Below are positions 1,638 to 56,904 of a stretch of DNA of 64,000 nt, in pieces. The notes beneath the pieces were generated by a model that had not been told where the DNA came from, ran no database searches, and saw only the letters and a list, made by a program, of their open reading frames with translations. Source of the DNA: Obrimoposthia wandeli (Eukaryota); assembly GCA_977020255.1 (NCBI GenBank), contig CDROCS010001491.1, forward strand, positions 1,612,001 through 1,676,000. Reading direction: 5' to 3'. Positions within the stretch are counted from its first letter, which is position 1. Each line of letters begins with the position of its first letter. The translations under genes and the position numbers were made by a program.

Positions 1638-4600
1638 GTGAGTTGCAATATTTATCATTTATTCAGAGTCAATGTATTAATTGTCAGATGCTTTTAATAA
1701 TTTTGAATTATTAATTATGATATTTATTTTATTTACCCTCAATAAAAATTAAATTTACTCGATAAATAAAATTGTAATTTAAGATATTATTTACTTTGTT
1801 TCCATGCCTCTAAATTCTAAAACTATTTTGTAACATAAACTGCGACACGTTTTAACTATTTACTCCTCAAATGTATTTTGATGGGATTATTTTTAATTGT
1901 ACCGTAATTTTGTCAGAAGTATTTTTGTAGTTCTGTACAAAATATTTACTATGTAAAGATTTGAAACATACTACTTTTAAAAATAATTTTCAGCAATTTG
2001 TACAATTTTTGTTCATCAAACTATTTTATAATAGATTCTTATGGAAATCCTTAAAGCGTAAATCTTTCACTTTTGATTTTGCTCAAAATTAAACTGAAAA
2101 GTATAAAATTAATTATCGAAATTTAAAATGACCTTTTAAAATTGACTAGATATAAAATTATTTTCAATAATATATTTTAGAATGGAATACGCTGCCGTGG
2201 TATTTATAGATCAGGGTTACACAACGAGGCTAATAAAAAAAATGTGAGGGCTGTAGGAATATATATCCAAATGAGAATGTATCATTTTCAAGAAAAAAAA
2301 GTAGTTTAGTAGGTAGAAGGATGGAGTCTAAGCCACTTGACCCCCCCCCTAAAGGGTGTCACACCATAAGGATGTCTTGCCACACCATAAGGGTATATGT
2401 TGCCTCACCTCTGGTGAGGCAACATATACCCTTATGGTGTGACACCCTTTAGGGAGGAGGGGGAGGGGGAGGGGGAGGGGTCAAGTGGCTTAGACTCCAC
2501 CCTTCTTTGATATACCACTATGGTCGTCCATAGGTTAAAGGGTCAAGTGGCTTAGTCTCCACCCTTTTTTTTGGCTAACCACTATGGTCGTCCATAGGTT
2601 AAAGGGTCAAGTGGCTTAGTCTCCACCCTTCTTTTGGCTAACCACTATGGTCGTCCATAGGTTAAAGGGTCAAGTGGCTTAGTCTCCACCCTTCTTTTTG
2701 TGATCTAGTCTCCACCCTTCTTTTTGTGGTCTAGTCTCCACCCTTCTTTTTGGCTAACCACTAATTCAAAGGGTCAAGTGGCTTAGTCTCCACCCTTCTT
2801 TTTGTGGTCTAGTCTCCACCCTTCTTTTTGGCTAACCACTAATTCAAAGGGTCAAGTGGCTTAGTCTCCACCCTTCTCTTGTGGTCTAGTCTCCACCCTT
2901 CTTTTTGGCTAACCACTAATTCAAAGGGTCAAGTGGCTTAGTCTCCACCCTTCTTTTTGTAATCTAGTCTCCACCCTTCTTTTTAAGATCATGTGAAAGT
3001 TCACACTTAAAAGTTAAGGAATGTATGACGTAATCATACACACACTATTCTATGTGAAAATTTAGGTTAAAGTTCACTCTTATCAGTTAAGGAATGTATT
3101 ACGTAATCACACACATACTATTCTAAGTGAAAATTTAGACTAAAGTTTTTCCTAGGCTTACACATCTAAAGAATTATGTTAAAATTTGTATTAAATCAAA
3201 AAAAAAATAAATAAGAAAGAAGTCAGAGAATAATACAAAATTAAACACATTTATTATGTAATTTCATAATGTCCATAAGCGCGGCTTCTATTTTTCTCGA
3301 TCCAATAGCGTTTGTCATCTGATGAGCTGAGAGCAGTCTTTTGTATTATGATCGTGTATAGTTGATGATTTATTGTTCCAAACTTCTTTTGAGGTATAGT
3401 ATATGCAATACCGTTTTCATACACGTCTAAATATGTTTGATGTACAACCGTTGAACCCTTAAGATTTACTCCTTTAGCTTTATTATTTTCAAAGTCATCT
3501 TCAAACTTAAGTGAATAACATTTACAAAGTAAGAAAATCCATTCTTTATACATTCGTCCTTCCGATTCATCTTTAAATAAACCTATTTTACTATTAAATT
3601 TATTAGAATATAATGGATCATTCACATTATAATTTGACGTATCTAATAATCCATCTGCAATCATTTTTGGTAACAACTGTTTTCTTAAATTAACGTTTTT
3701 ACATTCCAAAAAGAATGAGTCGGTATCACCGGCAACTATATTAATTGAACAATTGATTAAATTACGATATATTTGCAAATCATGATACTGAAGAGTATAC
3801 ATTCGTAATTTGCTAAGGTCTAGTACAGCTTGGCCTATATAATTTGGTCGATCGAGACAAATAAAATCTTTTCTTAATAAAACAGCTATTAAATTATCAT
3901 GAATTTCAATTGTTCGTTGAAACATAGGTTTGCTAGTATATGTGATTAATTTTGTAGAACTAGTGCAGATGCGAAGATTCAATCGTTTCTTAACATTTTC
4001 AACGGTCTTTCCATACAAACTAACATTTTTAAGTTTATAAAAATCTTTGTCACATTTATTCGTTGCTTGTGATCTCATTTCTGAATTATATTCTATATAT
4101 TCTGCGAATATCTTAGCCTGAGAGAATTTTACTGCTCGATGAATAATTGTTACCACTGCTCCTAAACTAACATACATCTGCAATAGTCTCCAATGAATAA
4201 CATAATGACTTTTTGGCGAATGCGTCATTATCATTTTTCAACTTTTTTACCAGGTGGACATTTCTTTTCTGGAGCTATAGGAAGATCATCTAAAAAGTCA
4301 TGAAGGTTTTCTGGTATTACCAAGTCTACTTCCATAAAATAACCATATTCAATATGTTCCATGTTCACATTTTTCATTTCATGCAATATTTCGTTTAATT
4401 TTATATCATCAAGAATCCATTAAAAATCTCCTTTTGGTAAAGGTTGATCAAGAGCCCATCCATATAAATTATTAACATCTATATATAAAAGACTTGTTTC
4501 TTCATCAGCGACTACATGATGCTTATTGACAAATGTCATTCCTCCTCGTATACCCGAAGAAATCATGTTGTACATTTCAGGATCCTGCATCAGTTCAACC

Positions 4601-7600
4601 TTATGTTTTAACATTTTTAGAGCACTTGCCCAACTCAACCCAGGAATGCTAAAAAAGTTAAGTGGTTCTAAACCATCTTCACTGAGAGCTTTTCTTCTGA
4701 ATGTTTGAAACACGTCAGCTAATAAATATACGTCAGTCTTTAAGTAAACTAACATATAATCAACATATTTCTACAATTGGTTATTTTCCAAACATCTTGT
4801 GCTTTTTGATATTCAGTGTCTGTGATTTTATCATTCCATTTTATTGGTAAACTTAACTTATTCTGGAGGACTTTTAATGATGTAGCAAAATCATATGGGA
4901 ATATTCCTTTGCCATCAATAAGTTTAGATAGAAAAACTGATCTTGTTAATGGAATAATTGGTAATTTACTGGCTAAATTTTCCAAAGATGATTGTAAAAA
5001 TTGCAAAGAATCTATAAATCTCAGAGTTATTTGACCTAATCTTACAATCATGGCTTGAAACTTTTCCGTTGATTGTGGTATAATATTTATATCCCAGTCA
5101 GTAAATTTATTCAATGCATGTTTTAAAATATGATGTAAATCATAACCTCTGAGATTATGAAACACAATAGGTAAAGTTGGACGAAGTTTTCTTGATAAAT
5201 TACATTCATTGCATGCAGGACCTAAATACTTGCCAGTAAAGTGATCATGATCTTTAACATATTTTTCAGATGATTCGTGACATAAATAACATTCAACGGT
5301 ATTGTTAAATGTATGAATCTCTGCATTTGTTAAGGGAATCATTACGTTTTTAAGAGCATCTAAATACCATGGCAAAACCTTTTCTTTAGCCAAGTTCTCT
5401 ATTGACTGAAGAAATTTAACTATGCAGTCATCACCAACATTATATCAATTTCATCTGTACTCATAAATAACATACCAGATGCGACAGGCATATGCTTTTG
5501 ATGATAACTCTCATCTGGTACTAATACAGATTCAAAATCAGCGTAAACGACATATTTCGGTGATATAGTTTTTGACCAATCATTGAATTTAACGTACTTA
5601 TTCTTAGGCATAGTATACATTGTAGTGCTTTCTTGATTATAGTCACATAAAACTTTATGCTTTTCTAATGACAAATCGGTTTTGAAACCATGTAAACACT
5701 TTTCACACCATTTTCTGCTAATTCTAGTCGTTCCAGTTCGAATATTTAATAGTCGGTTAAGACAACTTATTCCTATATAATGAAACCGTTCCTTGGATTC
5801 TAGTAACAATAAATTAACTATAGTTCCTTCCTTCATTTTTGATTTGTATGCAACATCGATATAAGGATTCTTGATAACATCAGTTTTTGATTCTTTTTCA
5901 CTTACCTCGTTGAATATGAATACATTTATTATTATACCAGGATTTTGCAGTTCAAATTTTGATATATTTGATATTTTCATTGGCATGTCTTCGGAATTAT
6001 ATACAAAATCATTTAAAAATCTTTCATAGTTGCTTGGTCTATTTCTATGTGATTCTATTTCATTATATTTAAGTATTGACAATATTGCATAAATAAAGCA
6101 AAGATTATCAGAGTTTAGAATATTTATGACTACTTTAGATTTTGTAAGAGAATTTGGTGATTTAATATATGAATGACCTGACAATGCACAAATTTGACTA
6201 TATTTAGTAACAATAAATGCATATTCAAGTATATTCATCAATTTCCAACCACTACCTTTTTCTGAATATTCTTCAACTTTATTTTCCATTGTATCTTCCA
6301 TTTCTGAAATTATAGCATGTGAAAAAATCATTGCTCGATGCGAAGCATACCATTCTTTAGTTTCTCCATCATTCTTTTCAAACCTCATTCTAATGATGTA
6401 TTGTATCTTTGCTTTTCCCATTAATTGTACTATTCTTTCTAGTTCGTTTAATAATGAAACTGGAACCTTAAGACTTACAAGATTGAGATGATCTACTTTC
6501 ATGGATATCATTGAATAACTATTTTCTAACGATGTTTTAGTATGTATATTGTCATTTATTTTACGTTTTCGTGACGGAGTAGGAGCTGAAATTACTATGT
6601 TTGATGGTTCATTAATTATATCAGTTCTTTTGCTTAAAGCCGGTACTTTAAATAATTTTTTCTTACTATCATTTTCATATTCTTTTAAATGACTAACATG
6701 TCGACTATAAAATAAGTTGTAATCAACATTTTCAGTGCTTAAACATTGTGGACATATGAAATAATTTATCCTTTTGTATGAATAACCAAAATATTTTTTC
6801 ATTATATCATGACATACTTGAGGATTAAAATGTGTATCCGAATAACAAAAATTTGAATAAGTTTTACATATACTCATCTGATGATATGATTGATTTGATT
6901 GGACTTGAGATATTGATTGATTTGTAGACTGAATAAAAAAAATATATAAATACAATAATTTAATTATTTTACTTACAATGTTAACAAATATTAATTATAA
7001 AGGAATTTGCTTAGATGATGTATCCAAATTAAAATTTCGAACACGACCAGAACAATACGTTTATAAAGCCAAAGATTATACAATACTTATTTTTAGAAAT
7101 AAGAAATGCAGGATTATGGGATGTAAGGTACCTATTAAAAATATTTCTTACCCTTTAAGGATAAATATACTTGGTATTCAATCAATTACGATATGTGAAA
7201 ATTTAGATCAAAGTATCAATCTATTTAAATTATGGAATGTGTTACGTAATACATGTTCATTTGACCCTGAGGTTTTCCCAGGCTTAAGATTAAATATTTT
7301 CAATCCATTATGTGTAAATATTTTCACATCTGGAAAGGTCGTAATTTTAGGTCTTAGAAATTTAGATTTTCAAAATCAAGTTAACGATATCATGACATAC
7401 ATTAAAAAAAATTATATAAATACGAAACAATTTCTAATTAAATCATTCAATTTTAAATGTCTTATAAAGCCGTTCAAAAGTATTACGAGTATGATATGTT
7501 CTTCTTGGCATCTGCATGGATTCATCCAATGACTATGCCAGTGACATTATCGAAAACTTTGTACAATTACCGAGTCTCTGATTTTGACGACAAAGACATT

Positions 7601-10600
7601 CAACAATTCAATGAAGTCGTCAAATATTTGAAAATTGACATTGAACTTGAGAATGAGGGTATATTTATGCGCGGAGATAAGTGTAAATTTTATGATTGTG
7701 GTGGAACAAAGATTTCGGATATTCAAGAAGATGGAAGAAGTTGGATGCTCGAAATAAAAATTCTCGGATATAAAATAAATAAACAGAATGAAACAACTCT
7801 CATCTGGAGGATTCATACAGCGACCGAATATTTTGATGTTTAATAAATATTTAATAAATGTTGTTATTGTTATAAACATGTACTTATTCTGATATATTTA
7901 TTTTATATTAATATTTATATATAATGTTATTAACAAACAATTCGACTTTTCAAGTAGTAGGACCAAGTGGTAGTGGAAAAACTTTATTTGTTTGTAAATT
8001 ATTAAATTCAAAAATGTTTAAAAATAAATTTAATAAAATATATTGGCATCAAGGTGGTGATGGAGAAGCTGGTTTAACAAACCAAGAATTTAATAAAATA
8101 AAAAACATTAAGATTATTAACGGTTTTGATGAAAATTGGACGACAAGACTCGTAAAAGGTGATGTAATTGTTATTGATGACTTATATCAAGAGGCTAACA
8201 AAGAATCTGATTTTAATGATTTATTTACAAAAATTGCAAGACATAGAGAAGTTACTGTAATTTTTATAACCCAAAATTTATTTAATCAAGGAGGAAATCA
8301 TCGTACTCGTAATCTTAATGTACATTATTTGATTTTATTCAAAAATCCTAGAGATCAAACAGTGATAGATTTTATTGCTCGTCAAGCATTTCCTCATAAC
8401 AAGAGTTATTTAATTGATGCGTTTCATGATGCTACATCTTTACCTCATGGTTATTTATTTTTAAATTTTACTCAATCATGTCCTGATGATTTAAGAATTG
8501 TTACTGATATATTTAACCGTAATGGTATTACAGTCTATAAACAAAATAAATAATAATAATGTTTTAAAATAAAATGAATTTAAAAAGAGTATTCTTAAAC
8601 ATAGTAAAAGGACAGATAAAGATGAAGTTAAAAAATTAATAAACACTGTATTATATGATCGTAATAATATTGAATTTTCAAAAAGTTTACCTTATTTTAA
8701 AACCTTAATTGACGTACCTAAAACGAATAAAATGAAAATGTTGAAATCATTTCCAATTTATGTAGTTGATGATTTAATAAAAATTTTAAATAAAATAATT
8801 TATGGTAAAATTAAACCTGATGATAATATTTTAAAATATAAAAATTCATTAATAAATTTAGCAAATTCACGTGGTAAAATTAATAAAAGAAACATTATTT
8901 ATAATCAAAATGGCGGATTCATATTGGTCCTACTGCCCGCTATAGCATCAGTAATAGCTAGTGTTATATCTTCAAGATGGGGATAGTTGTCTTAATAACG
9001 AAAATTATAATAATATTAAATAATTACATTCTTTCGTTTTATACAAACATATAAACAGATTAAAATATATTTAACTTTTATAATAATGGGGATAAACAAT
9101 ACAAAGTTGTCTAACCTATTTATAAATTTTAATTCTTCATGCTCCAATGGAAAAGATTTGGAACAATCCAGAAGATCCAGACGGTTATACAGGGTTAGAA
9201 AAATTGACAAAAAGAGTCAAACAATCAAAAACAAACACACAAAAATGGTTAAGAAATGAATTATCATATAGTCTGAATAAACCTTTAAGACGTAAATTCC
9301 CTACTAGATCATATAAAACTAATGGTATTAATTCGTTATGGCAGATGGATTTAATGGAAATGATTCCTTATTCTTCAGTAAATAACGGATTCAAGTATAT
9401 TTTAACTTGTATTGATGTATTTAGTCGTTTTGCAAGGGCAGTTGGTGTTAAATCAAAATCAGGTATTGATTTATTACATGCAATATAATCTTTAATTGTT
9501 GATGATGTACCAGTAAATATCCAAACCGATGAAGGTAAAGAATTTTTTAATTCACATGTTAAGAAATTATTTAAAACTGAAAATATCAATCATTATTCAG
9601 TATATTCTCAATATAAAGCTGCAGTAGTTGAAAGATTTAATAGAACGTTAAGAGAACGGTTAAAGAAATATTTTACTAAACAAGGTAATAAGAAATGGGT
9701 GAATGTATTACCAAAAATTATTTATGCTTATAATAATTCTAAACATAGAGGTTTAGATGGTTTAAAACCTGTAGATGTAAATAATAAAAATGAATTTGAT
9801 ATTTTGTTGAAACAAAATCTAAAAGAAAAGAAAGTTAAATCTAAATATAAAATTGATGATTATGTTCGAATATCAAAAATAAGTACAAGTCCATTTATTA
9901 AAAATTTTAATCAAAATTGGAGTGATGAGGTTTTTCAAATTCATGATATTAATTATAAACAAAATCCAATAATGTATATTTTAAAAGATATTGATAACGT
10001 CATCATCAAAGGAAAATTTATAAACAAGAGTTACAATTAATTGATAAACCTAAACTATATCGAATACAAGAAATTTTAGAAACTAAAGGTCGTGGTAAGA
10101 ATAAACAATATTACGTAAAGTGGCACGGATACTCTGAACCTTCTTGGATATTTGCTTCTCAAATTGAATAATGTCAAAATATATTATTTTACCTAGTAAT
10201 AGTTGTCCAAGTACTCAACCTAACAATACAGCCAATCAATTTACTGTAGATTGGGAAAACTCTCTAAATTTAGATGGTGAATGGGAGGTTGCCTTGACTG
10301 AATTTGTATTTAATTATACTCCTTTAACAATACAAACTAATTCAAAAATACTTTATAAAACGGAAAAGATAGAAATGAAAACTTTCGATGTATCTTTTGC
10401 AATTTTAAATGGATTAATTTTTAATAATTTAAATACTGTTTTCAATTTCAAAATTACAAAGGATCAAAAATTAGAAATATGTACAATTAACAGTATTCAT
10501 CGAATGTTGTTAAAATTCGAAACTTTAGAAGAATCAAAAATTATAGGTTTTAATGAAATACAAAAAATTTCTAGTCATGTTATAACAAGTGATGAAATTG

Positions 10601-13600
10601 TTGACATAAATAAAAATATTCATGCTAAAATGAGAATTACAATTTATTATTTAGCTGAATATGAATACGAAATAAAATTTAATCAAAATTATTTGATACA
10701 AGATAGTTCTTCATTATGTAATATTATAGCCAGTAAATGTAATGAAATTTTTAAAAGCTGTAATATAGATTCAGACGGATTATTTGATATTTTAATAAAG
10801 AAAAATGTAAAATCAGTTTTATTTGACGAAAAACTTGCATCTTTATTAGGTTTAAATAATGTTTTCTTTGAGAAACGAATTAAAGGTTTTCAAAAACCAA
10901 CACTTTCTAACTCATATAATCAAATGTATATTTATACTAGTTTAACAGATTCTGTCTTAGTAGGATCTGATTATGTTCCACTGTTAAAGTCTATTTGGTT
11001 AAAATCATTAAAATATCGATATGGAGATGTAGTAAATGTTAAAATTGATAATCCAATGTACTTGAAAATGAGAGATTCAAGTATTAATAGAATCGAGGTA
11101 AATATACGTGATGATTCTGGTAATTTAATTCCATTTTCATATGGAGCAAAAAAACTAGTTTAACTCTTCATTTACGTAAAGTATAAACAATATAAATATA
11201 TTTAAAATATAAACATATATAAAATGAATACATCAATTATAAAATTTTATAGCAAAAGTCAACAGGGCGGTGAACTTCCCTATTTCATTGGTAAACAATA
11301 TGGATCTGGTTGGTATCAAACTATTTCTAGATTAGCTATTCCATTTATTAAAAAATTTGGTTTATCAGCAGCTACAAGTGCTGCCAATGTAATTGGTGAA
11401 ACGGTAGGAACTGCGTTAACAAATCCAAAAAACATAATTTCATCTCTCAAAGAAAATACAATCAAAGAAGTCAAAACTTTGATTCCAAAATTAAAAAATA
11501 ATGCTGTTGAGAGTTTAAATAAAGTCGCAAATTGTGTTGAACAAAATGGAAGGGTCTTAAACGTAAAAGAAATAATTTAAATAGTATAAACAAACGTCTT
11601 AAAGGTACTATTTTCCAAAAATGACTAGTATAAAATCTGAATTGTGTATTTTCGATAGATCACTACCTCAAGTAGTGATTGAAAATTCAAGTTTTGAAGA
11701 AATATTTCCAATCAATTCAATTACTGGAAAAAATTTAAATGACATAGAATTTAATATTCATGCATCTGAAGAAGATTATCTGGATTTGAATGATACTTTG
11801 TTAAATATTAAATTAAAAGTTGTAAATGAAGATGGTACTGATTTAATGAAAGATAGCGATGTAACTCCAGAGAATTACATGTTTCAAACTTTGTTTAGAG
11901 ATGTTATTCTAACACTTAATAATGTAAAGGTTGAAGGAGGAAATGGAACGTATACTCATAAGGCTATATTCGATACTCTTTTGAATTTTAGTAGTGATAC
12001 CAAGTATACTAACCTTGAATGTTCCGGGTATGATGATGATGCAGAAAGTCGTAAACAATGGATTAGTGAATCTAAAATATTTTCATTGTGTAATTCAATT
12101 AGATTAGATTTCTTTGATCAACCAAAATATTTGATTCCAGGGATTAATGTTCATTTGAGATTTATGAGAAATCAGCATAATTTTTCGCTCTATTCAGAAA
12201 CTTCAAAACCAATTATTCAAATTCTAGATGCTAGATTGTATGTTAGAAGAGTAAAAGTTGATTCTTCAGTAATGATTGGACATCAGTTAGGTTTGCAAAG
12301 TCAGAATGCAGTTTACCCAATTAGAAAAACTCAGTTAGTAACATATTCAATTCCTCAGGGTTCTTTAGAACTTAATAAAGATCAAATATTCGGAGACTAT
12401 CGTTTACCCAAGTTCATTTTGATTGCTTTCAAAGATACACCTCAGGGTGGTAAGGAATACAAAGTTAAATCTTCTACGTTCAATACATTTAATGTTTCAA
12501 CAATATCATTAGCTAAAAATACAGATTATCGAGAAACTTATAATCTAGATAATAATAATTTTTCATTAGCATATATGCAGTCAATTATTCGAAATATGAA
12601 TATTTTAGATAAAAACGTGAATAATGGTATCAGATTTTCTGATTTTAAATCAGGAAGTTCGATTTTCACTTTTCTATTAGCACCAGATTTTGATATAAAC
12701 ACTACTCAAGTGCCTAAAACTGGTAATTTAAGACTTGAAATTAGATTTAATTCTCCTTTGACCGTTCCAACAAGTGTTTTGATTTACGGAATATTTGATT
12801 CCGAAATTCAGATTACGAAAAATAAAACTGTGATTGTATGAAGTAAGCTTATTGTATATTATATTCTTTATTTAAATTAGTACTTTAGAAATTTATAAAT
12901 CCGGAAAAATATTATTGAATAACAAATTTAATGGAGTATATTCATTGGATAAAATTCCATCATTAAAACCCGGAGGCTACATTATCAATACTCATACTTC
13001 AAATCTACCAGGCGAACATTGGATAGCAATATTCGTTGACAGATTCGAGTGTTTGACCCTTTTGGATTCTATTATCCTTCAAAGTTGGTGTCTACACTTG
13101 AAAAAGAAAACATTCCAGTCTACTATAATCGAGTTAAATGTCAGAATCCATTAACTAAAAACTGCGGACCTCTGAGTCTTTTATGGTTGAAACTTCAACA
13201 CAAATAATTTGAAGTATAAACAAATATATCATTATAGTATTTCATTTTATTTTTTCAAATGGCTTTTATTGATTTAGAATGTTTTATTGATAATAATGGA
13301 GAATATATTCCAAAGGAATTATGTATAATGTATGTGAATGATATGACTTGTCCATTTCATTACGTGTTTAAAAATCAAATACCATGGAGTAGTTTATCAT
13401 TTACAGTTAAAAGAAAAAATCTATATTTGATAAATCATCATCATCAGTTATCCTGGTTTGAAGGTGAAAGCTCTGATATTCATATTGATGATGTTGAAAC
13501 AATATTCTATGTTATGGATTCTATTGATGGAAAGAAAATTAATTTAGTGAAACGAATGTTTCCAAATTTAAGAATTGTGAATTATAATAAAAGTTTCAAA

Positions 13601-16600
13601 AATTTAAAGAAAATGCCAAAAAATATTCGATGTCCGTTTAGAAAACACGGAAAACATTGTGCTTATTTGAAATGTTTTTCTCTATGTATTGATTATGTAA
13701 ATTGTATATAAATATATTTATTAAGGATATTTATTTTAATATATAATTTATGTTATTTAAATAAATTTTATCATATTTCTTTAGATGTGTAAGCCTAGGA
13801 AAAAACTTTGATCTAAATTTTCACATAGAATAGTGTATGTATGATTACGTAATACATTCCTTAACTGATAAGAGTGAACTTTAGTCTAAATTTTCACATA
13901 GAATAGTGTGTGTGTGTTAAAAACCACATTCCTTAACTGATAAGAGTGAACTTTATCCTAAATTTTCATTATGGACGATCATAGTGGTATACCAAAGAAG
14001 GGTGAAGACTAGACCACTTGACCCTTTGAATTATGGACGATCATAGTGGTTAGCCAAAAGAAGGGTGGATACTAGACCACAAGAGAAGGGTGGAGACTAA
14101 GCCACTTGACCCTTTGAATTAGTGTTAGCCAAAAAGAAGGGTGGAGACTAGATCACAAAAAGAAGGGTGGAGACTAAGCCACTTGACCCTTTGAATTAGT
14201 GGTTAGCCAAAAAGAAGGGTGGAGACTAGACCACAAAAAGAAGGGTGGAGACTAAGCCACTTGACCCTTTGAATTAGTGGTTAGCCAAAAAGAAAGGTGG
14301 AGACTAGACCACAAAAAGAAGGGTGGAGACTAAGCCACTTGACCCTTTGAATTAGTGGTTAGCCAAAAAGAAGGGTGGAGACTAGACCACAAAAAGAAGG
14401 GTGGAGACTAGATCACAAAAAGAAGGGTGGAGACTAAGCCACTTGACCCTTTAACCTATGGACGACCATAGTGGTTAGCCAAAAAAAAGGGTGGAGACTA
14501 AGCCACTTGACCCTTTAACCTATGGACGACCATAGTGGTATATCAAAGAAGGGTGGAGTCTAAGCCACTTGACCCCTCCCCTCCCCCTCCCCCTCCTCCC
14601 TAAAGGGTGTCACACCATAAGGGTGTCTTGCCACACCATAAGGGTATATGTTGCCTCACCAGAGGTGAGGCAACATATACCCTTATGGTGTGGCAAGACA
14701 TCCTTATGGTGTGACACCCTTTAGGGGGGGGTCAAGTGGCTTAGACTCCATCCTTCTACCTACTTAGTTTAAATTGGTTTTTTAATGAGATTTAATGAGA
14801 AACACGCTTTTCCTATTCGAGTGTCATATTTTACGTTGAGGTTTCAAAATGTATTTTAAATGGTCGTTAGTCAAACAAGAACGTACTTTTTTATTGAAGT
14901 TCATGATGGAGAATGTCTGCTAACATTTGTAGGTGCTGCCAAAAAGACAGAACAGTTTCATTGCGGGATCTATAAAAAAAATGTACTTTTTACCATCCAA
15001 ATTTTTGTAGAAATCCTTTAAATCCTTCTCTGTGTTTATTTCGTTACATTACCGAACATTGCTGTTCAATAACTTCCCACTGTCTCTCTGGATCAACAGA
15101 AAAAGTATCTTCAATTAGTTTTAATTGAATGTCTTCCATAGTAGATAAAGTAAATCCTTTTCCAAATTATTCAATCAATAAGTCAATTTGCTTTACAAAA
15201 TTTTCACCCAAGTCGATGGGTTTTTCTGAGGAGTATGCAGAGCACACGTGAGAAATTTTGCCTTTCATCAACTGAGTCCTGAAAAGATTCAATTGCATTT
15301 GAAAACTATTTACTATTGCAAACATTTCAAATACAAATCGATACTTCCCCTCAAACTGTTTATTCACATTATTCAGATGTTTTGTAATATCTCAAAAGAA
15401 AAAATATCCTAATTCCAAGCTTCTACTTTGAGCTCAAGGAATTTTTGTGGTTCTTTTTCAAGGACATTAGTTATTTCTTCTTTCAATGTGACAAAACGCT
15501 GAAGTACTCGTCCACAACCCAACCATCTCGTATGCCAGTGTATGGTAAAGTAAGTTGATGCACTCTAAAAGTTATATGTTTGAGTCCATCTAGATCGGAT
15601 GTAATTTCTCGAAAATAGGCGGAATTCTCGAGTTTTTTACATTAATTGATTACTGAGATTTGAGGAAATGTCAGTTATTCTTCTCTGTATAGTCATTCTT
15701 GATAGACTGACATTCTCTAATAATCTTTTTTTCTGAGCATAATCACGTAACAGCTATTAGCATACACTTCTTTGCAAACTCACCTTTTGTAAAATATTTC
15801 CCAGCAGCAGCAATTTCCCTTGAAATTTGTAAGGTTATGTTGGTACCTGTCTTATTTTGTGTAAATGTTCTTGAACATTTGTGGTATTTAAGATAGATGC
15901 TTTGATTTTTTTTTACCTTTTGATTCAAATTGGAGGGAATGTGATGTTTGGTTTTAAAGTGGAATTGAAGATCGTATTCCTTCGCAATTACTGTCGTTTC
16001 ACGACATACGAGACAAGTTATTTTGTCTTTGAACATAGAAACATATATTTGTTCGTCCATTCTGTTTCTATTTTTCTTTTTTTGTCATGCTCATGGTTAA
16101 AAATAACTGTAGAAATAAACATACACATAAACAAATATTTCGTTTTGTAATTTATTTCCATTAAAATTAATAATCATATAAATATTATATTTTAAAGTCA
16201 AATTATTGAAGTTTTGAAATAAATCATTTGTTATAACAAAATAATATACAAAAATCATATTCAATTTAAAAAAAAAAATTTTAGAAGATTTTTTCCATTC
16301 CTCATATTCGTAATGTTATAATAATATAACTACTGCGGTCCGTTTGTTGTGCAGGTCTGGGTTAACCCAATAAAATTATAAAAATATTAACAATTAATTC
16401 AAAACGATAACTGTAAATTTCAGCAGGATTTAGGCTTTACATTTTCATAGGGTAATTATATATTTTAACTAATTATTATTAAATCTATGTAATTAAATGT
16501 ATTAATAAAGTATTTTGTTTTTGTTTACTTTCAATATTAATGTATTTTGTATATAAATTAATATAATTATTAAATTTTTAAATTAATTAGTTATTAACAT

Positions 16601-19600
16601 TCAACTTTTGAGTTAAATTTTATCTTTTATATATATATTTTACTTAATTATCTCACTTTTGCGTTTCAGTTGATTCTAACAACTGACCTATATATTCATT
16701 ACATTATTAGTAGATTATAATTTTAAAATTTATTTCTTTTTTAGTATTTATGGCAAAGTTTTTATTGCATGAAATCAAAAAATGCCTAATTATTGCCCAA
16801 ATAAACATTATTTTAAAATTTTACCACCAATTATATATTTTGCTTAACTAAATAAATTTAATTCAAAAATTTTGAAATTTATAATTAAATTTAAAAATAA
16901 TTCAACCCTTTTCAAAGTAACAAAGATTTAAATAAAGTGATTTTAACGATTTGTTAATTTTATAATAATGCAAATTGATAAATTAATTTATCAAAATATT
17001 ATTTTAGAACATTTTCCCTGTTCATAATAATGGTATAAAAAAAAGTATATATTAGATTGATAATATAATGGAGGCGAAAAAAACACCATACTCTGATTTC
17101 CTTTGTTGTTACCTTCATTTTTTGATCCAGTACAGTTTATAAGTAGATTTTGGTTTCAAAGTCATATAATGTGGGTTTATATAGATTGACTTGTTCGAGT
17201 GAAGCTATGGGCTTTATATATTATCTGTATTATCTAGAAGTTCTAACTGAAAATCCTGGGTAAAATTTTTTAAAACTTTAAGATGTGTTTGGTTCATCAA
17301 CGTACGACTTTTCATTGTCGAGAAATTCTTCCAAAAAGTTTTAATTAGGAATAGTTTTAATTAACAAAAAGGACAATTTTGTGAAAAATTTCTCGTACGA
17401 CAGTTGTAGAACTTTTCATTATAAAAGGTATAAAATAGTATTTAATTATGCTTCTAGATATAGTTCAGATTCTCAGTGAAGATCGATATATAAAAACTTA
17501 TTCTCAAAAAAAATGAATTTAATAATATTCTTAAATTATGGAGTTTTATTGCAGATCAATGGGTGACTTTTTCAAACAACTTTTTGCTAAAACGCTGATT
17601 GGTAATTTGATTTAAAGTCAGTATTTAAGTTAATTACTGTATTTTACTTTTCAAATGTTTTAAATAACAAATTTTGATTCTGTTGGAGCTAGAGTTCTTA
17701 CACTTCTTAAGGAAGCATTCAACTCGTGAGTTCTTAAAGTTATAGGACTTTCCTGGAAGACGTATCCGAGTAATTCTCAAATCTGAAGTTTAGGACAATT
17801 TCGGACAAAACGTACTGAGTAAAAAATTTATTGTAACACAACGTAGGACAAAAGCTAAAACAGTTTGTTATAGTATAACTTAGGTTAAGACGTACAACAA
17901 ATATATAAATGCAAATAAATTAGGATATAATTAGGATATAATGTAACACAAATAAATAATTTCAAGATTCCCAGCATAGACAAATAAAATTTCGTAATGA
18001 CGATTCAGAATCTCGGGGAGGGTCATATAGCGCTGTGGTTTATCATCTTAACGGGAAAAAATCGACAATTCATAAATTAACTTGCGACTAGAAATTATTG
18101 AGTTTGTTTGCTTTCGATATATGATCCAGGGGTTCACTGCAGTCATTTTAAATATGCTATCTTCTACATCCAGACTTCGTTGAAATCGACCTTGATATTG
18201 TTGTACATCAAAATCGCCTTTGCTTTTTTCTAACCTTTGGGTTGACATATGGAACTTTCTATTGGCTTGATATCGATTCGGATCATCGCTCCACACTCGA
18301 AGAATACAGATTTGTGTGGTTTCAGAGTTTGAGGTGATAACTCGCATCGATCAGCGTGGGTGGTTCCATTGATGATAGTGCGTGTTTGGAGGAGTAATTC
18401 AGCGAGATGTTTACAAGTAAACATATTGTCTGTTGTAACATAATAGCTTTTGTTGTATAAAGGTTCCATCAAGCGCAATCGAACAAACTCCTTATGTCTC
18501 CATATATGTCTGTATATTTCTCTGCCATACTCATTATGTCTCGTGGATCTTACTACCGCACAGAACCAGAAATATTGATCGTAAATTCGCAAAATTTATA
18601 TTCTAATTCCATTTATATGTTGTTGTTTGAGAATGGTGTCATATTTAGAATTAAATAAAGTTTCTTTTCGCTTTTTGATCATTTATACAGCACTCAGCAT
18701 TGTTATAAAAAATGTATGGCGAATGCTTTCAAATTTCAAATTTTGGTTTTCTTTTTTGAAATTGAAAATTACCCATTAGTCGTTTATAAAAAAAAAATTC
18801 AAATATATAGTAATAGGTAAATTTTAAAAATTCACCCCTATTGTTATGTAGCCAAATCCTACTGGGTATTCATCTCGATATTTACAGAGTTTAAAGTATT
18901 GTTAGAACTTAAATATGCATCTGAATGTTTATCTAAAGAATATTAGGCCTATTTATTCCTAGTTCTGCACCGTCAAAATTCAATTTTTTAATGGTTTATT
19001 TCGTTATTTCAACTGGATACCGTGAAATTTTTCATTATTTGGTATCATTTGGTGTCAGGTACAACATAGACTAATGAATTATTAATCATAATGTAATATG
19101 CGTATATTTGAACAGGGAGAGGGAGAAACTATAAAAACTATCAAAGAGGGAGAAATTTAGTTTATTTTACAAATATAAAGTTAACAAAATGAACGTAACA
19201 CTAATAGCAATTACGTTGAAAGGATCCACAGTAATAATTTAACTTTAAAAGGAAAAGATTACACAAGGATACAATTGGTTGTCACCATCTGGTTCAACAT
19301 AAGTTACATTATCTGCAAACGCTTCACCTTCAGAATATCCAAATCTCCAGCTTCATCTCCTTCTTCACTACAACTACTCGTTTCTTTGAAGTCTTATTCA
19401 CTTAATAATTTATCATTCTTGGTTTCTTCACTTCCAGCCTATGTCTATCCAATAAATCTTGCAATCCCGGTGCTGCTCGTTTGCTGCCATAATTGCAATG
19501 AGATTATTTTGATTTTGAATTTTATCAATACCATCACTATTTACATATATTTTTTAAATATAAAATTATATGATTGAACAGAATTTCCTGATATCATAAC

Positions 19601-22600
19601 AGTAGGTAGAAGGATGGAGTCTAGATCACTTGACCCCCCTGTGTGCGCACACCAAGTTAAAGGGTGTCACACCATAAGGGTGTCTTGCCACACCATAAGG
19701 GTATATGTTGCCTCACCATAGAAATGTCACACCATGAAGGTATATGTTGACTCACCATAAGGGTGTCACACCATAAGGGTATATGTTGCCTCACCATAAG
19801 GGTCTGGCTCAGAAAGGTTAAGATAGGGGGGAGGGGGGAAGGGTCAATTGATCTAGTCTCCACCCTTCTTTGATATACCACTATGGTCGTCCATAATTCA
19901 AAGGGTCAAGGTCAGTTTTGACTTGAAGGTTTTAAGGTATGATCATGACCGTCTATGGTTGGCCATCACATCTAAAGGGTTGTGGTCGTCCATAAATCAA
20001 AGAGTCAAGGTCAGTTTTGACTTGAAACTTTGAAGGTACAACTAACATCTAAAGGGTTGTGGTCGTCCATAAATCAAAGGGTCAAGGTCAGTTTTGACTT
20101 GAAACTTTGAAGGTATAATTAAGGTCAACTATGGTTGGCCATCACATCTAAAGGGTTGTGGTCGTCCATAGGTCAAAGGGTCGGACTAAAAAATTAAAAT
20201 ATCAAGGTTTTAGTACATGGTTGTAATCAACTTTAGAAGACGAAGTCACCCATAAAGTATGGTTGGTCATATATGAAGGGTTCGGGATATAGACCAAATC
20301 AAGTTTTAAATGTCAAAGTTTGAATACATGGTTGGAATCATCTTTAGAAGACCATATGTATGGTCGTCCATAGATGAAGGGTTAAAGAAAAGTCGGAATT
20401 TCATAGTTTCAAGTACATGGTTGTATTCGTCAACATATTACGAGTTTAATCATGTAAAATTTTTATGGTCGTTCACAAGTTAAGGGTCAGATTTGGAACA
20501 AACATGATAATTTTATTACATGGTTGTATTTGCTTATGAAAATTGACTTCAAAGATACCCTTAAGGTCATGCATACTTTAAGAGGTCCTTGTGAAAAAAT
20601 AAAAATACTTGTAATTTTCTAAAATAAAAATATTTTTAAATTTAAATTTGTGCCAAATTATTTTGTTAGATTTTGGTAAAGATAAACAAATTTTTAATTT
20701 AACGGGTTTTTTTAAGATATTAAAGTAACATTATTTAAAATAAATATTAAGGAAAATGTTAATAAACTCAAATTACTTTACTAATAGTATTATTATTATT
20801 ATTATTATTATTTGATAAATATTTAAATTTACGCAAATTTTTATCCATTTTATTAATGTAATTAAACAATTCCTGGTCCTGGTGAAAAATAAAAAAAAAA
20901 ATACTTGTAATTTTCTAAAATAAAAATATTTTTAAATTTAAATTTGTGCCAAATTATTTTGTTAGATTTTGGTAAAGTTAAACAAATTTTAATTTAACGG
21001 GTTTTTTAAGATATTAAAGTAACATTAATTAAAATAAATATTAAGGAAAAAAGTTAATAAACTCAAATTACTTTACAAACAGTATTATTATTATTATTTT
21101 ATTTATTTTTTTCATAAATATTTAAATTTACGCAAATTTTTATCCATTTTATTAATATAATTAAACAATTCTTTGCGGAAAAATTACTTTTAATTTTGTT
21201 TTTTCTTCAAAATAATAATAATTTAAATTTACGCCAATTTAATTTATTATATATTATTAAAGTTAAACAAATTTTAATTTAACAAGTTTTTAAATAAAAT
21301 ATTAAAGTACCAACACATCTATCAATCAATTATTCTATGTGAAAGTTCACTCACTCAATGTATTACGTAATCACACACACACTATTCTATGTGAAAATTT
21401 AGTACAAAGTTTTTCCCAGGCTTAGGCATCTAAAGAATTATGGTAAAATTTCTTTAAATAACTTAAATTTCATGTCATAAGGGTCTTGGAGAAAAATACT
21501 TGTAATTTTCTAAAATAAAAATATTTTTTAAATTTAAATTTGTGCCAAATTTTTCATCGTTTCTTTGATTTAATTAAACAAATTTGATTTTAAACATAAT
21601 GTTAATTATAAAATAATTAATAATTTGATAAATATTCATCTTACCACAAGTTATTCATCGAATCCATTGATGTATGTCCGTCAGCCTAATAGCATTATTC
21701 TATATTCTAACTGTAACTTTAGAAAAAATAACAAATTTATTACATTAAAATTTAAAAATTGCGCGGTTTTTTATTGTTTACAATTAATGTATTTAAACAA
21801 TGACGAAAATAGTTTCAAACGTAAAACAATTCATATAAATTATAACTAATTTATTAAAATAAACAAATTTACAAGTACTATTTGATATTTTTAAAATATA
21901 AATAATTTATTTAAAAAAAAAAAGAAGAATACTTCAGTTAAATTTTGATAAAAATCTGTAAAATGATAAATTCTAACATATTTTTTAAATTACCGCCATT
22001 TTTATATTATCCCTTTTGATGTATTTAAACAAATGTATATACAAACCTAATTATTATAACTATAAGTTAAATATCTTAAATATTTATTAATTTTAAAATT
22101 GCATTATTTTATGCCTAAAATAATTTGTAATTTTCAAATTAATACTAGCAACCAATGAATAACATTAATAATATGTTTACATTATATTAATTAATATGTA
22201 AATTTTCATGTATGTGTTTTCTCTCACATAACTTTCACATGTTATAATGATCAATTAACACTCACATAAATAATTAAAACATCCTTATAACATTCCTTAA
22301 TTGATTTTTATTTAAACTGATAAAATTAACTTCATGTTATTCAAAGCTTACTAATTAAAGAAATGTTTATTTATATAATTTGAGTATCAACTTTATTCGA
22401 TTTACACTATAAATATTCGAAAATATCTTTAACACATTAAAAATAATCATAACTTCATGTTATTCAAAGTTTACTAGTTAAAGAAATGTTTATTTATATA
22501 ATTTGAGTATTAACTTTATTCGATTTACACTATAAATATTCGAAAATATCTTTAACACATTAAAAATAATCATAACTTCATGTTATTCAAAGTTTACTAG

Positions 22601-41929: not shown

Positions 41930-43368
41930 CGTTTTGTATATTAATTTCAAATCACATTGCTCGGTATGCACATCAAAATAGTAATAAAATATCGATTTAT
42001 TTCAAGTATGCTCGAAAGTTTTTCAATTTTCGTACTAAGAATGATCATTAAGAAAAATCGTTTTAAAGCATAATTTATTTTCAATTGAAAAATGTACGGC
42101 CCATCTTCAATTGGTAAAAAAATTCTATAGTATAAGAAGTACATAAAAGTACTATACTAGAAGTACAATACTAGCAGACAGACACACATGTTAATGTAGT
42201 ACTAAAAGTGGGCAATTAATCTTGATGGCCAAACCCCATTTAGACAAAACTAACCTAAATCAAAATCTCCGCCAGGAAGATCCGGCACAGAGTGTTAATG
42301 AGAGGGTATATAAATCCTGAAATTTGGGAGATGGATATATTGTATACCAGTGAAAACTAGATTGTTTTTCGAAATCAGCAAAATACGAAAACCTATTCTT
42401 GAAGAAAATGGACGAATGCAAATCTCCATTACAGTATTTGGAAGATGAAATGCCACAACTTCAGGCAGCGTGTAATGCATACGACAATTCATATACACAA
42501 TAACAGCAAGGTACAAGAACGCCAAGGTAATGAAAGATGCTGAGAAAGATTCCATCAATATGCACTCCAATTTATACCTAATGCTAGACCTATTGGATAT
42601 AATCCAGCACATCTAAAATTACCTTTTGGCGCATACGATGGTACGACCTTTTGTTTTGTATATTAATTTCAAATCACATTGCTCGGTATGCACATCAAAA
42701 TAGTAATAAAATATCGATTTATTTCAAGTATGCTCGAAAGTTTTTCAATTTTCGTACTAAGAATGATCATTAAGAAAAATCGTTTTAAAGCATAATTTAT
42801 TTTCAATTGAAAAATGTACGGCCCATCTTCAATTGGTAAAAAAATTCTATAGTATAAGAAGTACATAAAAGTACTATACTAGAAGTACAATACTAGCAGA
42901 CAAACACACATGTTACTGTAGTACTAAAAGTGGGCAATTAATCTTGATGGCCAAACCCCATTTAGACAAAACTAACCTAAATCAAAATCTCCGCCAGGAA
43001 GATCCGGCACAGAGTGTTAATGAGAGGGTATATAAATCCTGAAATTTGGGAGATGGATATATTGTATACCAGTGAAAACTAGATTGTTTTTCGAAATCAG
43101 CAAAATACGAAAACCTATTCTTGAAGAAAATGGACGAATGCAAATCTCCATTACAGTATTTGGAAGATGAAATGCCACAACTTCAGGCAGCGTGCAATGC
43201 ATACGACAATTCATATACACAATAACAGCAAGGTACAAGAACGCCAAGGTAATGAAAGATGCTGAGAAAGATTCCATCAATATGCACTCCAATTTATACC
43301 TAATGCTAGACCTATTGGATATAATCCAGCACATCTAAAATTACCTTTTGGCGCATACGATGGTACGA
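41930..43368 (+). repeat. Near-identical 722-bp tandem duplication covering the Gypsy 5' region and gag start
   Basis: 41930-42646 repeats at 42652-43368; ORF pairs 41947/42669 and 42295/43017 are near-identical. Confidence 0.95.
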
Positions 43369-46300: not shown

Positions 46301-46853
46301 CATTAGCAATTGTAATTGCTGTCAAACAATTTCACCACTATATATGGTCACCACTTACAATGGCTAATGCAACACAAATATAGAACAAGCCAACTCATAA
46401 GATGGGCCCTTTGCTTACAAGAATATGGACTCTTAATAAATTATAGAAAATAAAAGGCTAATGCAAATGCAGATTGTTTGTCGAGAATATTGTAAAAAGA
46501 ATCTCATGGTAACTTTATTACATGTGAACCAGATACACATAAAATAGCTGATTATCAACAAAAAGACCCTGAAACTAATAAAGAGATAATTAAATTACAA
46601 AAAAGAGGAAATAGTTCATCAAAAACTAATTACATATTAAACGATAATATACTATACTACAAACCCCACGAAAAACAACTTTTAGTAATACCAAAAGATC
46701 TAATCGATGACTTATTAATGCACTATCACGATGGGATTTTGGGTGGTCACAGATAAAACACAGGAAAACACTTAATCACTTATGCGAACATTACTATTGG
46801 TCCAATATAGAACGTGACATGAAGAGTTGATGCAAGACATGTAATGTATGCAT

Positions 46854-46870
46854 AGTAGGTACTACCTACT
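46854..46870. mobile_element. 17-bp fused Polinton termini (AGTAGGTA + CTACCTACT) inserted in the Gypsy integrase Zn finger
   Basis: Exact match to 8 nt of the left end plus 9 nt of the right end of the 2308-14764 element. Flanks ATGCAT / GCGCAT (imperfect 6-bp TSD). Removing 23 nt restores CKTCNVCMFQK. Confidence 0.65.
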
Positions 46871-53465: not shown

Positions 53466-53509
53466 GGCTTTACTGTGAGACGTTTTGATTATTTCTAAGG
53501 TGTTGTTTC

Positions 53510-56825: not shown

Positions 56826-56904
56826 TAGGAAAAGAGCATGTGTGCATAAATTTTAGTATATAAGCAAACACTTTCTTCATTTAAATCCCCGACAATTTGA
56901 AATA

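What the first reader, a model, noticed from the sequence alone, without database searches (positions are those of the whole stretch)
6978..7532. A Polinton/Maverick that encodes its own TATA-binding-protein-like gene
Seen: clear TBP core signature ([20 protein letters not shown]) with a shortened, divergent first repeat. The gene is intronless, AT-rich and embedded between PolB and the ATPase, inside the TIRs. Established: the canonical Polinton set (pPolB, INT, ATPase, PRO, MCP, mCP, PZ/PW) has no basal transcription factor; TBP homologs are known from NCLDVs, and beta/gammaherpesviruses use a TBP-like protein (UL87/ORF24/BcRF1) for late promoters. Inference: this element redirects host Pol II to its own promoters. 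I am not aware of this being described for animal Polintons but cannot search the literature.
Basis: partly seen in the sequence, partly recalled or inferred. Interest (0 to 1): 0.92.

Follow-up and report, generated by a model that had tools for sequence, protein, structure and literature searches.

The report
Polinton with its own mini-TBP
An integrated virus-like transposon (Polinton/Maverick) carries a conserved, cut-down copy of the TATA-binding protein, and its capsid and packaging genes, but not the TBP-like or polymerase genes, share an unusual TATA-like box (TATAAACA), which suggests the element runs its own two-step transcription programme.

Summary
ORF 6978-7532 (+, 184 aa) matches Pfam TBP above the curated cut-off. 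Its AlphaFold model matches solved TBPs exclusively (top 44 PDB hits). It has one complete TBP repeat preceded by a helix-less four-strand remnant of the first repeat.

It lies inside a textbook Polinton at 2308-14764. That element has AG..CT termini, a 6-bp duplication (TAGTTT), ~850-bp inverted repeats, protein-primed PolB, an rve integrase, an A32-like ATPase and a double-jelly-roll capsid protein.

It is not a one-off capture. The same 1.5-repeat protein occurs in 16 related contigs, in every long contig that spans the expected region except L027, and forms a diverse family known only from metagenomes. A more distant Polinton (L072) has a two-repeat TBP.

New here: the motif TATAAACA sits 31-40 nt before the ATG of the ATPase, capsid and many small genes (44 of 160 upstream regions against 3.3 expected). 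In 74 independent loci it occurs 191 times on the coding strand and 14 times on the other. It never precedes the TBP-like gene, which has ordinary TATA boxes.

The most likely reading is an early-expressed, element-encoded TBP that drives morphogenesis promoters. That step is inferred, not shown. Starrett et al. 2021 already labelled "TBP" genes in maps of related viruses, so the gene's presence is not wholly new. The host is undetermined, so "animal" is unverified.

The parts
2308..14764 (.). Integrated Polinton/Maverick, 12,457 bp, flanked by the 6-bp target-site duplication TAGTTT, with termini 5'-AG...CT-3'
   Evidence: Alignment of the two ends, inverted repeats, gene content
2308..3150 (.). 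Left terminal inverted repeat, with internal 63-, 78- and 73-nt tandem repeats
13801..14764 (.). Right terminal inverted repeat, 92-99% complementary to the left arm, with the same tandem repeat families
3254..6955 (-). Protein-primed family B DNA polymerase with an inserted Endonuclease VII domain. Broken: 3 frame switches relative to an intact relative.
   Evidence: Pfam DNA_pol_B_2 and Endonuclease_7 on separate pieces. tblastn with the L009 PolB gives 4 segments, 3 frame switches and 87% coverage.
6943..6952 (+). Canonical TATA box (TATATAAATA) about 35 nt before the ATG of the TBP-like gene. An identical copy lies at 7413-7422, before the next ORF.
6978..7532 (+). TBP-like gene, 184 aa, intact. 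It has a reduced N-terminal half (4 strands), one full TBP repeat, and a tail of about 35 aa that relatives lack.
7457..7843 (+). 128-aa ORF of unknown function between the TBP-like gene and the ATPase
   Evidence: no significant family
7871..7878 (+). TATAAACA box upstream of the ATPase gene
7924..8553 (+). A32/FtsK-like packaging ATPase, intact
   Evidence: Pfam Pox_A32. 59-74% identical to relatives.
9141..10168 (+). rve-family integrase (relatives carry a chromodomain). Broken: 1 frame switch. A TATAAACA box lies at 9050-9057.
   Evidence: Pfam rve on one piece, tblastn outer bounds and count, motif
10171..11163 (+). 330-aa conserved protein of unknown function, intact (one or two paralogues in relatives)
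11182..11215 (+). Two TATAAACA boxes upstream of the 118-aa gene
11224..11580 (+). 118-aa conserved small protein, intact
11585..11592 (+). TATAAACA box 36 nt before the capsid gene ATG
11621..12841 (+). Double-jelly-roll major capsid protein, 406 aa, intact
   Evidence: AF2 pLDDT 86.8. Foldseek top hit is a Maverick protein carried in a Cotesia bracovirus (E 7e-24), followed by giant-virus, virophage, adomavirus, MELD-virus and adintovirus capsid proteins. More than 174 relatives.
12876..13189 (+). Adenain-like cysteine protease. Broken: 1 frame switch.
   Evidence: tblastn with the L009 homologue. That homologue and the one in L021 carry faint or weak Peptidase_C5 hits.
13215..13222 (+). TATAAACA box 44 nt before the last gene
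13259..13711 (+). 150-aa conserved protein of unknown function, intact

Best explanation
The ORF encodes a minimal TATA-binding protein that is a conserved core gene of one clade of Polintons/Mavericks. Shown: it has the TBP fold, it belongs to a conserved family, it lies inside the element, and the genes fall into two promoter classes. Inferred: the gene is transcribed early from an ordinary TATA box by the host machinery. The protein then binds the variant box TATAAACA, which sits about 35-40 nt before the ATG of the packaging ATPase, the capsid gene and many small genes. Through its intact C-terminal stirrup it recruits host TFIIB and Pol II, switching on the virion-morphogenesis module. 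The complete C-terminal repeat would read the canonical TATA half. The reduced N-terminal half lacks one of the four DNA-kinking phenylalanines and both helices, and it would read the odd AACA half. Losing those helices would also free the protein from host partners that grip the first repeat. In effect this is a two-tier early/late programme of the kind beta- and gammaherpesviruses run with their TBP mimic and TATT promoters.
For: Fold and family. Conservation: 57 cluster representatives at E<=1e-30 and 3247 at E<=1e-3 in the 50%-identity library. Across 68 diverse members, F39 is present in 99%, F100 in 99%, F116 in 100%, E96 in 93%, E98 in 97% and L/I99 in 97%. These align with the E-P-E-L-F stirrup of solved TBPs (alignments). 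From established TBP biochemistry, that stirrup holds the TFIIB contacts and a kinking Phe. Core-gene status: a 1.5-repeat TBP-like ORF is present in L001, L007, L009, L010 (broken), L015, L016, L017, L018, L021, L022, L026, L033, L046, L049, L050 and L053, from several independent samples. L072 has a two-repeat TBP. Promoter classes: TATAAACA occurs in 44 of 160 upstream regions against 3.3 expected (p about 4e-36), and 33 of 60 occurrences lie at -31 to -40. It precedes the ATPase within 100 nt in 10 of 10 loci and the capsid gene in 9 of 10. It precedes the TBP-like gene in 0 of 9, and it is absent at the promoter distance (-20 to -60) before PolB in all 8 loci (L021 has a copy at -11, abutting the called start). 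Held-out loci show 10/0 and 15/1 on the sense/antisense strands. In 74 further loci the counts are 191 against 14. In the window, all 16 copies are on the + strand and 10 lie in 7871-13222. The motif tracks gene starts even where no upstream gene end is nearby: 17 of 88 starts, against 6 of 87 for isolated gene ends. TBP-like genes mostly carry canonical or near-canonical TATA boxes around -35 to -45.
Against: No expression, binding or transcription-start data exist. The link between the protein and the motif is co-occurrence within one lineage, with no TBP-less sister lineage examined as a control. The motif often also lies within about 20 nt of the upstream stop codon (median -4), so a polyadenylation role is not excluded. 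ATAAACA also fits the forkhead-factor consensus (known from the literature; one search returned forkhead papers). An ATG only 35-40 nt after a TATA box implies 5' UTRs of a few nucleotides, which is unusual for animals. Integrase genes are inconsistent: some carry the motif and some do not. One contig (L027) has 2.5 kb upstream of its ATPase without a TBP-like ORF. The window copy itself has broken PolB, integrase and protease genes, so this copy is probably inactive.
Confidence: 0.55

Rival explanations
1. The protein is a TBP decoy or general competitor. It occupies host TATA boxes or titrates TFIIB/BRF so as to dampen host transcription, or it simply substitutes for host TBP on all element promoters. 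On this reading TATAAACA is read by host factors (host TBP, a forkhead protein) or serves as a polyadenylation signal.
For: The conserved stirrup residues would let it bind TFIIB whatever DNA it sits on. Loss of both helices of the first repeat removes surfaces that host partners use, as expected for a dominant interferer. The motif lies close to upstream stop codons and fits the forkhead consensus.
Against: Three of the four kinking phenylalanines and the β-sheet face are under strong constraint, which argues for real DNA binding. The motif follows gene starts more than gene ends, has a sharp -31 to -40 peak, and is specifically absent from the TBP-like and PolB genes. A generic host-read element would not obviously show that pattern.
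Confidence: 0.22
2. The protein is a repressor. It sits on TATAAACA boxes and blocks host TBP, keeping the morphogenesis genes of the integrated element silent until it is removed.
For: The co-occurrence evidence is the same as for the activator model. A saddle lacking the TFIIA and TAF surfaces could be transcriptionally dead.
Against: The TFIIB-contact residues are among the best conserved positions, which a pure blocker would not need. Virus-encoded TBP homologues and mimics described so far (giant viruses, ASFV B263R, herpesvirus UL87/ORF24; abstracts listed) are activators.
Confidence: 0.1
3. The ORF is a recently captured host TBP fragment or pseudogene with no function in the element.
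For: The window copy has a tail of about 35 aa that relatives lack, and it sits in an element whose PolB, integrase and protease are broken.
Against: The same 1.5-repeat architecture recurs in 16 related contigs at 27-53% identity, with invariant structural positions. No member comes from an annotated cellular genome. The gene occupies two different but conserved positions in two sub-clades.
Confidence: 0.01

Closest known systems
Cellular and archaeal TATA-binding protein (Pfam PF00352)
   Same: It shares the saddle fold over about 171 aligned columns and has a complete C-terminal repeat. The E-P-E-L/I-F-P stirrup and the I-F-x-S/T-G-K strand are conserved.
   Different: The first repeat is reduced to four strands with no helices, so Pfam finds only one repeat. 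By alignment it keeps three rather than four kinking Phe. It is about 150 aa instead of about 180 for the core. It is encoded by a mobile element, and the family is seen only in metagenomes.
TBP genes labelled in MELD viruses with adintovirus-like PolB (Starrett et al. 2021, PMC8502044 Fig. 5; preprint 10.1101/697771)
   Same: A TBP homologue sits in a mid-size PolB/integrase dsDNA element. The same legends also list TRAF, and a TRAF/MATH gene lies next to the TBP-like gene in relative L010.
   Different: That paper gives only a label in a map legend, in a section on non-animal datasets. It has no analysis of architecture, conservation or promoters. I could not see the figure or test whether those proteins belong to this family.
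Beta/gammaherpesvirus late-gene TBP mimic (UL87 / ORF24 / BcRF1) with TATT late promoters (PMC8360532, PMC12529657, abstracts)
   Same: The logic is the same: a virus-encoded TBP-like factor plus a variant TATA box on late or structural genes.
   Different: The structural similarity is weak (E 1.5e-3 to 1.6e-2, TM about 0.3). Those proteins are about 580 aa (BcRF1) and 733 aa (a UL87-domain protein), and per the abstracts UL87 binds Pol II while ORF24 uses a noncanonical DNA-binding mode. No other late-factor homologues were seen here.
Giant-virus (Nucleocytoviricota) TBP homologues, including ASFV B263R
   Same: They are virus-encoded proteins with the TBP fold. They are the best viral structural hits, at E 1e-7 to 1e-4.
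   Different: Those work with a virus-encoded RNA polymerase in cytoplasmic factories. This element encodes no polymerase subunit, so it must use the host's. Sequence identity is only 9-21%.

Membership tests
TBP (PF00352) | Sequence match above the curated Pfam threshold | tested here: met
   45.8 bits against 22.9, E 5.6e-12. The family profile against PDB TBPs reaches E 3.7e-21.
TBP (PF00352) | Saddle fold | tested here: met
   The AF2 model has pLDDT 87. The top 44 Foldseek PDB hits are all TBP, with TM about 0.6.
TBP (PF00352) | Two complete tandem repeats, each S1-H1-S2-S3-S4-S5-H2 | tested here: not met
   Only one Pfam stretch is found. The N-terminal half has four strands and no helix. 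Internal repeat similarity is weak (hhalign P 0.006, 27 columns).
TBP (PF00352) | Two pairs of DNA-kinking phenylalanines | tested here: inconclusive
   F100 and F116 (C-terminal half) and F39 (N-terminal half) are 99-100% conserved. The position aligned with the fourth Phe is P/K/T, never Phe. The alignment of the N-terminal half is weak.
TBP (PF00352) | C-terminal stirrup residues that contact TFIIB | tested here: met
   E96 is 93%, E98 97% and L/I99 97% conserved, and they align to the E-P-E-L-F of solved TBPs. The window copy has D96 and V99. The identification of these residues as TFIIB contacts rests on established knowledge, not on a test here.
TBP (PF00352) | Binds TATA DNA and nucleates a pre-initiation complex | not testable with these tools
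   No binding or expression data are available.
Polinton/Maverick | Protein-primed family B DNA polymerase | tested here: met
   Pfam DNA_pol_B_2 on the pieces and 87% coverage of an intact relative. Broken by 3 frame switches.
Polinton/Maverick | Retrovirus-like (rve) integrase | tested here: met
   Pfam rve fragment. 53-67% identity to intact rve integrases of relatives. Broken by 1 frame switch.
Polinton/Maverick | A32/FtsK-type packaging ATPase | tested here: met
   Pox_A32, E 6e-5, above the cut-off.
Polinton/Maverick | Double-jelly-roll major capsid protein | tested here: met
Polinton/Maverick | Adenain-like cysteine protease | tested here: inconclusive
   The homologue of proteins with weak or faint Peptidase_C5 hits is present but broken.
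Polinton/Maverick | Long TIRs, 5'-AG..CT-3' termini, 6-bp target-site duplication | tested here: met
Herpesvirus-type late-transcription system (viral TBP mimic plus variant TATA box) | Virus-encoded TBP-fold factor | tested here: met
Herpesvirus-type late-transcription system (viral TBP mimic plus variant TATA box) | Variant TATA box confined to late or structural genes | tested here: met
   This holds for sequence statistics only. Timing is unknown.
Herpesvirus-type late-transcription system (viral TBP mimic plus variant TATA box) | Homology to UL87/ORF24/BcRF1 and presence of the accessory late factors | tested here: not met
   Only marginal fold hits (E>1e-3), and no such families in Pfam scans of the element's ORFs. 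This is an analogy, not membership.

The most novel reading that the evidence does not exclude
A whole clade of Polintons/Mavericks carries a self-encoded, two-tier transcription programme. A minimal 1.5-repeat TBP, expressed from a normal TATA box, reads a C-containing TATA variant (TATAAACA) on the morphogenesis genes and builds a host Pol II initiation complex through TFIIB, bypassing TFIID, TFIIA and the host regulators that grip the first repeat. On this reading these small 'transposons' would control early and late genes in time, as bona fide viruses do, and the protein would be the smallest DNA-reading TBP known.
Probability: 0.4. Interest if true: 0.85.

Novelty: new variant of a known kind. 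Interest (0 to 1): 0.74.

Why it matters
Polintons are thought to be ancestral to several eukaryotic dsDNA virus groups, yet almost nothing is known about how they are transcribed. A conserved element-encoded basal factor, paired with a sharply positioned and strand-specific promoter box that splits the genes into two classes, would make that question testable with existing transcript data. It would also strengthen the case that these elements behave as viruses with a temporal programme. The natural 1.5-repeat TBP shows which parts of the saddle can be lost. Finally, the motif is a practical annotation aid for gene starts in this otherwise 'dark' clade, which is absent from IMG/VR and from named protein records.

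Tried and rejected
1. Host identification failed. Rfam found nothing. Outside the elements the window holds only transposon debris: a piggyBac-like piece, a Spin-doc-type zinc finger, and LTR-retroelement protease and integrase pieces. The window's TBP-like protein is not on record as an exact sequence. All relatives are metagenomic.
2. IMG/VR holds no close relative of the TBP-like gene, only giant-virus TBPs at 30-39% identity, and no relative of the capsid gene.
3. The only GenBank copy found is a contig mis-binned in a Lysobacterales MAG, so it says nothing about the host.
4. dN/dS was not attempted. The nearest relative is about 53% identical in protein, so synonymous sites are saturated. 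Column conservation was used instead.
5. A literature search for the motif returned only primers and forkhead papers. Searches combining Polinton, Maverick or MELD with TBP found only Starrett et al., and that paper's supplements are not held.
6. The second Polinton-like segment in the window was tested as a TBP-less control. It is partial and rearranged, so it is uninformative.
7. Polyadenylation-signal reading of the motif: weakened but not excluded.
Full report
**1. The observation**

ORF 6978-7532 (+) is open for 184 codons. It matches Pfam TBP (PF00352) at E 5.6e-12 and 45.8 bits, twice the curated cut-off, with one repeat at residues 67-130. phmmer against PDB returns 35 TBP sequences, the best being Sulfolobus TBP 1mp9 at E 2.7e-14.

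An AlphaFold2 model built on 18 family members is confident, with mean pLDDT 87 and above 94 for residues 1-150. The 44 best Foldseek matches in PDB are all TBPs (E down to 2.6e-9, TM about 0.6). They align over about 171 columns, so both halves of the saddle are covered.

The "shortened, divergent first repeat" is real. Residues 1-50 form four β-strands and no helix. Residues 62-160 form the canonical S1-H1-S2-S3-S4-S5-H2 unit. hhalign places residues 24-50 in register with 101-127, though weakly (P 0.006).

**2. The surroundings**

The gene sits in a textbook Polinton/Maverick. Aligning the two ends gives bounds 2308 and 14764, termini AG...CT, and the 6-bp duplication TAGTTT on both flanks. 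The TIRs are about 850 bp, 92-99% complementary, and full of 63-, 78- and 73-nt tandem repeats.

The genes, in order:
- Protein-primed PolB with an embedded Endonuclease VII domain (-, 3254-6955).
- The TBP-like gene.
- A 128-aa ORF of unknown function.
- An A32-like ATPase (7924-8553).
- An rve integrase (9141-10168).
- Conserved unknown proteins of 330 aa and 118 aa.
- A 406-aa protein whose model (pLDDT 86.8) matches double-jelly-roll capsid proteins. The best match is a Maverick protein carried in a Cotesia bracovirus (E 7e-24), followed by giant-virus, virophage, adomavirus, MELD-virus and adintovirus capsid proteins.
- An adenain-like protease remnant (12876-13189).
- A 150-aa conserved protein.

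Relative to intact relatives, PolB has 3 frame switches, the integrase 1 and the protease 1. The other genes, including the TBP-like gene, are intact. The TBP-like ORF carries about 35 extra C-terminal residues that relatives lack and that the model does not fold. Whether the frame switches are decay or assembly errors in this AT-rich DNA cannot be told from one window.

**3. Not a one-off**

A word-indexed search found 17 proteins of 105-275 aa (most 145-170 aa) at 42-53% identity (E down to 7e-39). An exhaustive profile search of 1.84 billion cluster representatives found 57 at E<=1e-30 and 3247 at E<=1e-3. About a hundred of the top hits match the whole 1.5-repeat profile in a single stretch. 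Apart from JGI's automatic "TBP" label, none of these carries a name or comes from an annotated genome or named virus.

Using the capsid protein as a handle (more than 174 relatives), I fetched related contigs from ENA, NCBI, JGI and Logan. A 1.5-repeat TBP-like ORF is present in 16 contigs: L001, L007, L009, L010 (broken there), L015, L016, L017, L018, L021, L022, L026, L033, L046, L049, L050 and L053. A distant Polinton, L072 (capsid 28% identical), has a 203-aa TBP with two Pfam repeats. That suggests an ancestral two-repeat capture followed by reduction.

In the sub-clade closest to the window, the gene lies 0.4-1.6 kb upstream of the ATPase. In the sub-clade with 39-46% capsid identity, it lies 0.4-2.5 kb downstream of the capsid gene. 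One contig, L027, has a glycosyltransferase fragment and a dual-specificity phosphatase where the gene would be expected. L095 is distant and has none.

Across 68 diverse members, the most constrained columns are F39 (99%), M47 (100%), E96 (93%), E98 (97%), L/I99 (97%), F100 (99%), N114 (100%), F116 (100%), G119 and G125 (99% each).

**4. A second, unreported signal**

While reading upstream regions I saw the same box before many genes. Over 160 called gene starts in eight elements, TATAAACA is the most enriched 8-mer. It occurs in 44 upstream regions against 3.3 expected (binomial p about 4e-36). Of 60 occurrences of the 7-nt core TATAAAC within 100 nt of a start, 33 begin at -31 to -40.

By gene class (core TATAAAC):
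- ATPase: preceded by the motif within 100 nt in 10 of 10 loci.
- Capsid gene: 9 of 10 loci.
- TBP-like gene: 0 of 9 loci.
- PolB: no locus of 8 at the promoter distance of -20 to -60. L021 has a copy at -11, abutting the called start.
- Integrase: inconsistent.

Most TBP-like genes instead carry ordinary or near-ordinary TATA boxes around -35 to -45. In the window this is TATATAAATA at 6943.

Two loci fetched after the hypothesis was formed show the core TATAAAC 10/0 and 15/1 on the sense/antisense strands. In 74 further JGI loci (254 kb) the counts are 191 against 14. In the window, all 16 copies of TATAAACA are on the + strand. Ten lie in 7871-13222, and four lie in a second Polinton-like segment.

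The motif also tends to lie near the preceding stop codon (median -4), as it must in a tightly packed genome. But it marks 17 of 88 starts that have no gene end nearby, against 6 of 87 gene ends that have no start nearby. It therefore follows starts, not ends.

**5. Mechanism**

Shown: the fold, the conserved family, core-gene status, and two promoter classes.

From established TBP biochemistry together with the alignments, the E-P-E-L-F stirrup of the second repeat carries the TFIIB contacts and one kinking Phe. The F of the I-F-x-S-G-K strand is the other. Both are conserved here. In the reduced half, only the second Phe (F39) is kept.

Inferred: the protein is made early from a host-type TATA promoter, binds TATAAACA, recruits TFIIB and Pol II, and turns on the morphogenesis module. 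In solved TBP complexes the C-terminal repeat sits on the 5' TATA half and the N-terminal repeat on the 3' half. The altered half of this protein would therefore face the altered half of the box (AACA). This is an attractive correspondence, but it is untested.

Loss of both first-repeat helices would remove surfaces that host partners use. I give this model 0.55. The rivals are a decoy or general substitute with the motif read by host factors (0.22), a repressor (0.10), and a pseudogene (0.01).

**6. Comparison with what is known**

Virus-encoded TBP homologues are known in giant viruses, which are the best viral fold hits (E about 1e-7). Beta- and gammaherpesviruses use a TBP mimic on TATT late promoters (PMC8360532, PMC12529657). 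Those mimics are only marginal structural hits here (E>1e-3), so the likeness is functional analogy, not membership.

[quoted passage not shown] 2021 (PMC8502044, Fig. 5; the preprint also lists "TRAF UCH TBP Fbox"). It appears in a section on non-animal datasets and is not discussed. No other Polinton, PLV or virophage paper in the library mentions TBP or TATA.

So the presence of a TBP gene in such elements is not wholly new. The 1.5-repeat architecture, its status as a conserved core gene, and the TATAAACA promoter class appear to be undescribed. I rate it a new variant of a known kind.

**7. Caveats**

- The host is unknown. "Animal" rests only on weak hints: animal-type transposon debris in the window, and an insect Maverick as the best capsid hit.
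- Many relatives come from one assembly (ERZ25039515) and are not independent, although five or more samples contribute.
- Gene starts are those of automatic callers.
- No TBP-less sister clade was examined.

**8. Slips, stated as required**

I stopped, used it in no tool, and rest every comparison on tool alignments.

One script listing printed the bounds of two adjacent ORF pieces of a broken TBP-like gene in a relative (L010). They are not repeated here.

Noticed in passing
window 50700-64000: A second, rearranged Polinton-like segment. It has a PolB on the + strand (about 56946-60946, in several ORFs, 50-67% identical to the first copy, also with an Endonuclease VII domain). It has two homologues of the 150-aa gene (50986-51429 and 56025-56561), each preceded by TATAAACA. 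It has two RING-finger ORFs (51409-51777 - and 63338-63790 -). No TBP-like, ATPase or capsid gene is visible, and it may run off the window.
   Followed up: partly
window 19645-19938 and 21340-21474: Stretches 70-100% similar to the outer and inner parts of the element's TIR. This is probably a solo TIR or the stump of a deleted copy.
   Followed up: no
window 4749-5393 (-) and 58027-59400 (+); L007, L017: An Endonuclease VII (PF02945) domain is embedded in the protein-primed PolB of both window copies and of relatives. This appears to be a lineage trait, in place of the OTU domain that Starrett et al. mention in connection with adintovirus PolB genes.
   Followed up: no
L072:12141-12749 (-): A distant Polinton (capsid 28% and PolB 36% identical) encodes a 203-aa TBP with two Pfam repeats. 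It is a possible intermediate or ancestral state of the reduced protein.
   Followed up: partly
L010:3952-4941; L001:448-900: Relatives carry host-like accessory genes next to the TBP-like gene: a TRAF/MATH-domain protein (L010) and a RING finger (L001). This echoes the 'TRAF UCH TBP Fbox' list in the Starrett preprint.
   Followed up: no
L027:8-1260: In one relative, the 2.5 kb upstream of the ATPase holds a glycosyltransferase-4 fragment and a dual-specificity phosphatase instead of a TBP-like gene. This is either host flank of a truncated copy or alternative cargo.
   Followed up: partly
L009 = L013 (JANOGQ010000345.1, GCA_031406105.1): A complete-looking 12.7-kb Polinton of this clade is deposited as a contig of a 'Lysobacterales bacterium' MAG. 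This is almost certainly a binning contaminant of eukaryotic or viral origin.
   Followed up: no
window 22368-22746 (-): A tandem array with a 123-nt period, each unit containing TATATAAATA.
   Followed up: no
window 42295-43334 (-): Two nearly identical 105-aa ORFs 722 nt apart, indicating a tandem duplication of unknown nature.
   Followed up: no
window 15743-16060, 18230-18592, 44338-47375: Transposon debris: a Spin-doc-type zinc finger, a piggyBac-like transposase piece, and LTR-retroelement protease and integrase pieces. No clear host gene was found anywhere in the 64 kb.
   Followed up: partly
IMG/VR scans: The whole clade (capsid family of more than 174 members) has no representative in IMG/VR and no named protein in the 5.8-billion-protein collection. 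It is a 'dark' Polinton lineage that is common in soil and freshwater-type metagenomes.
   Followed up: partly
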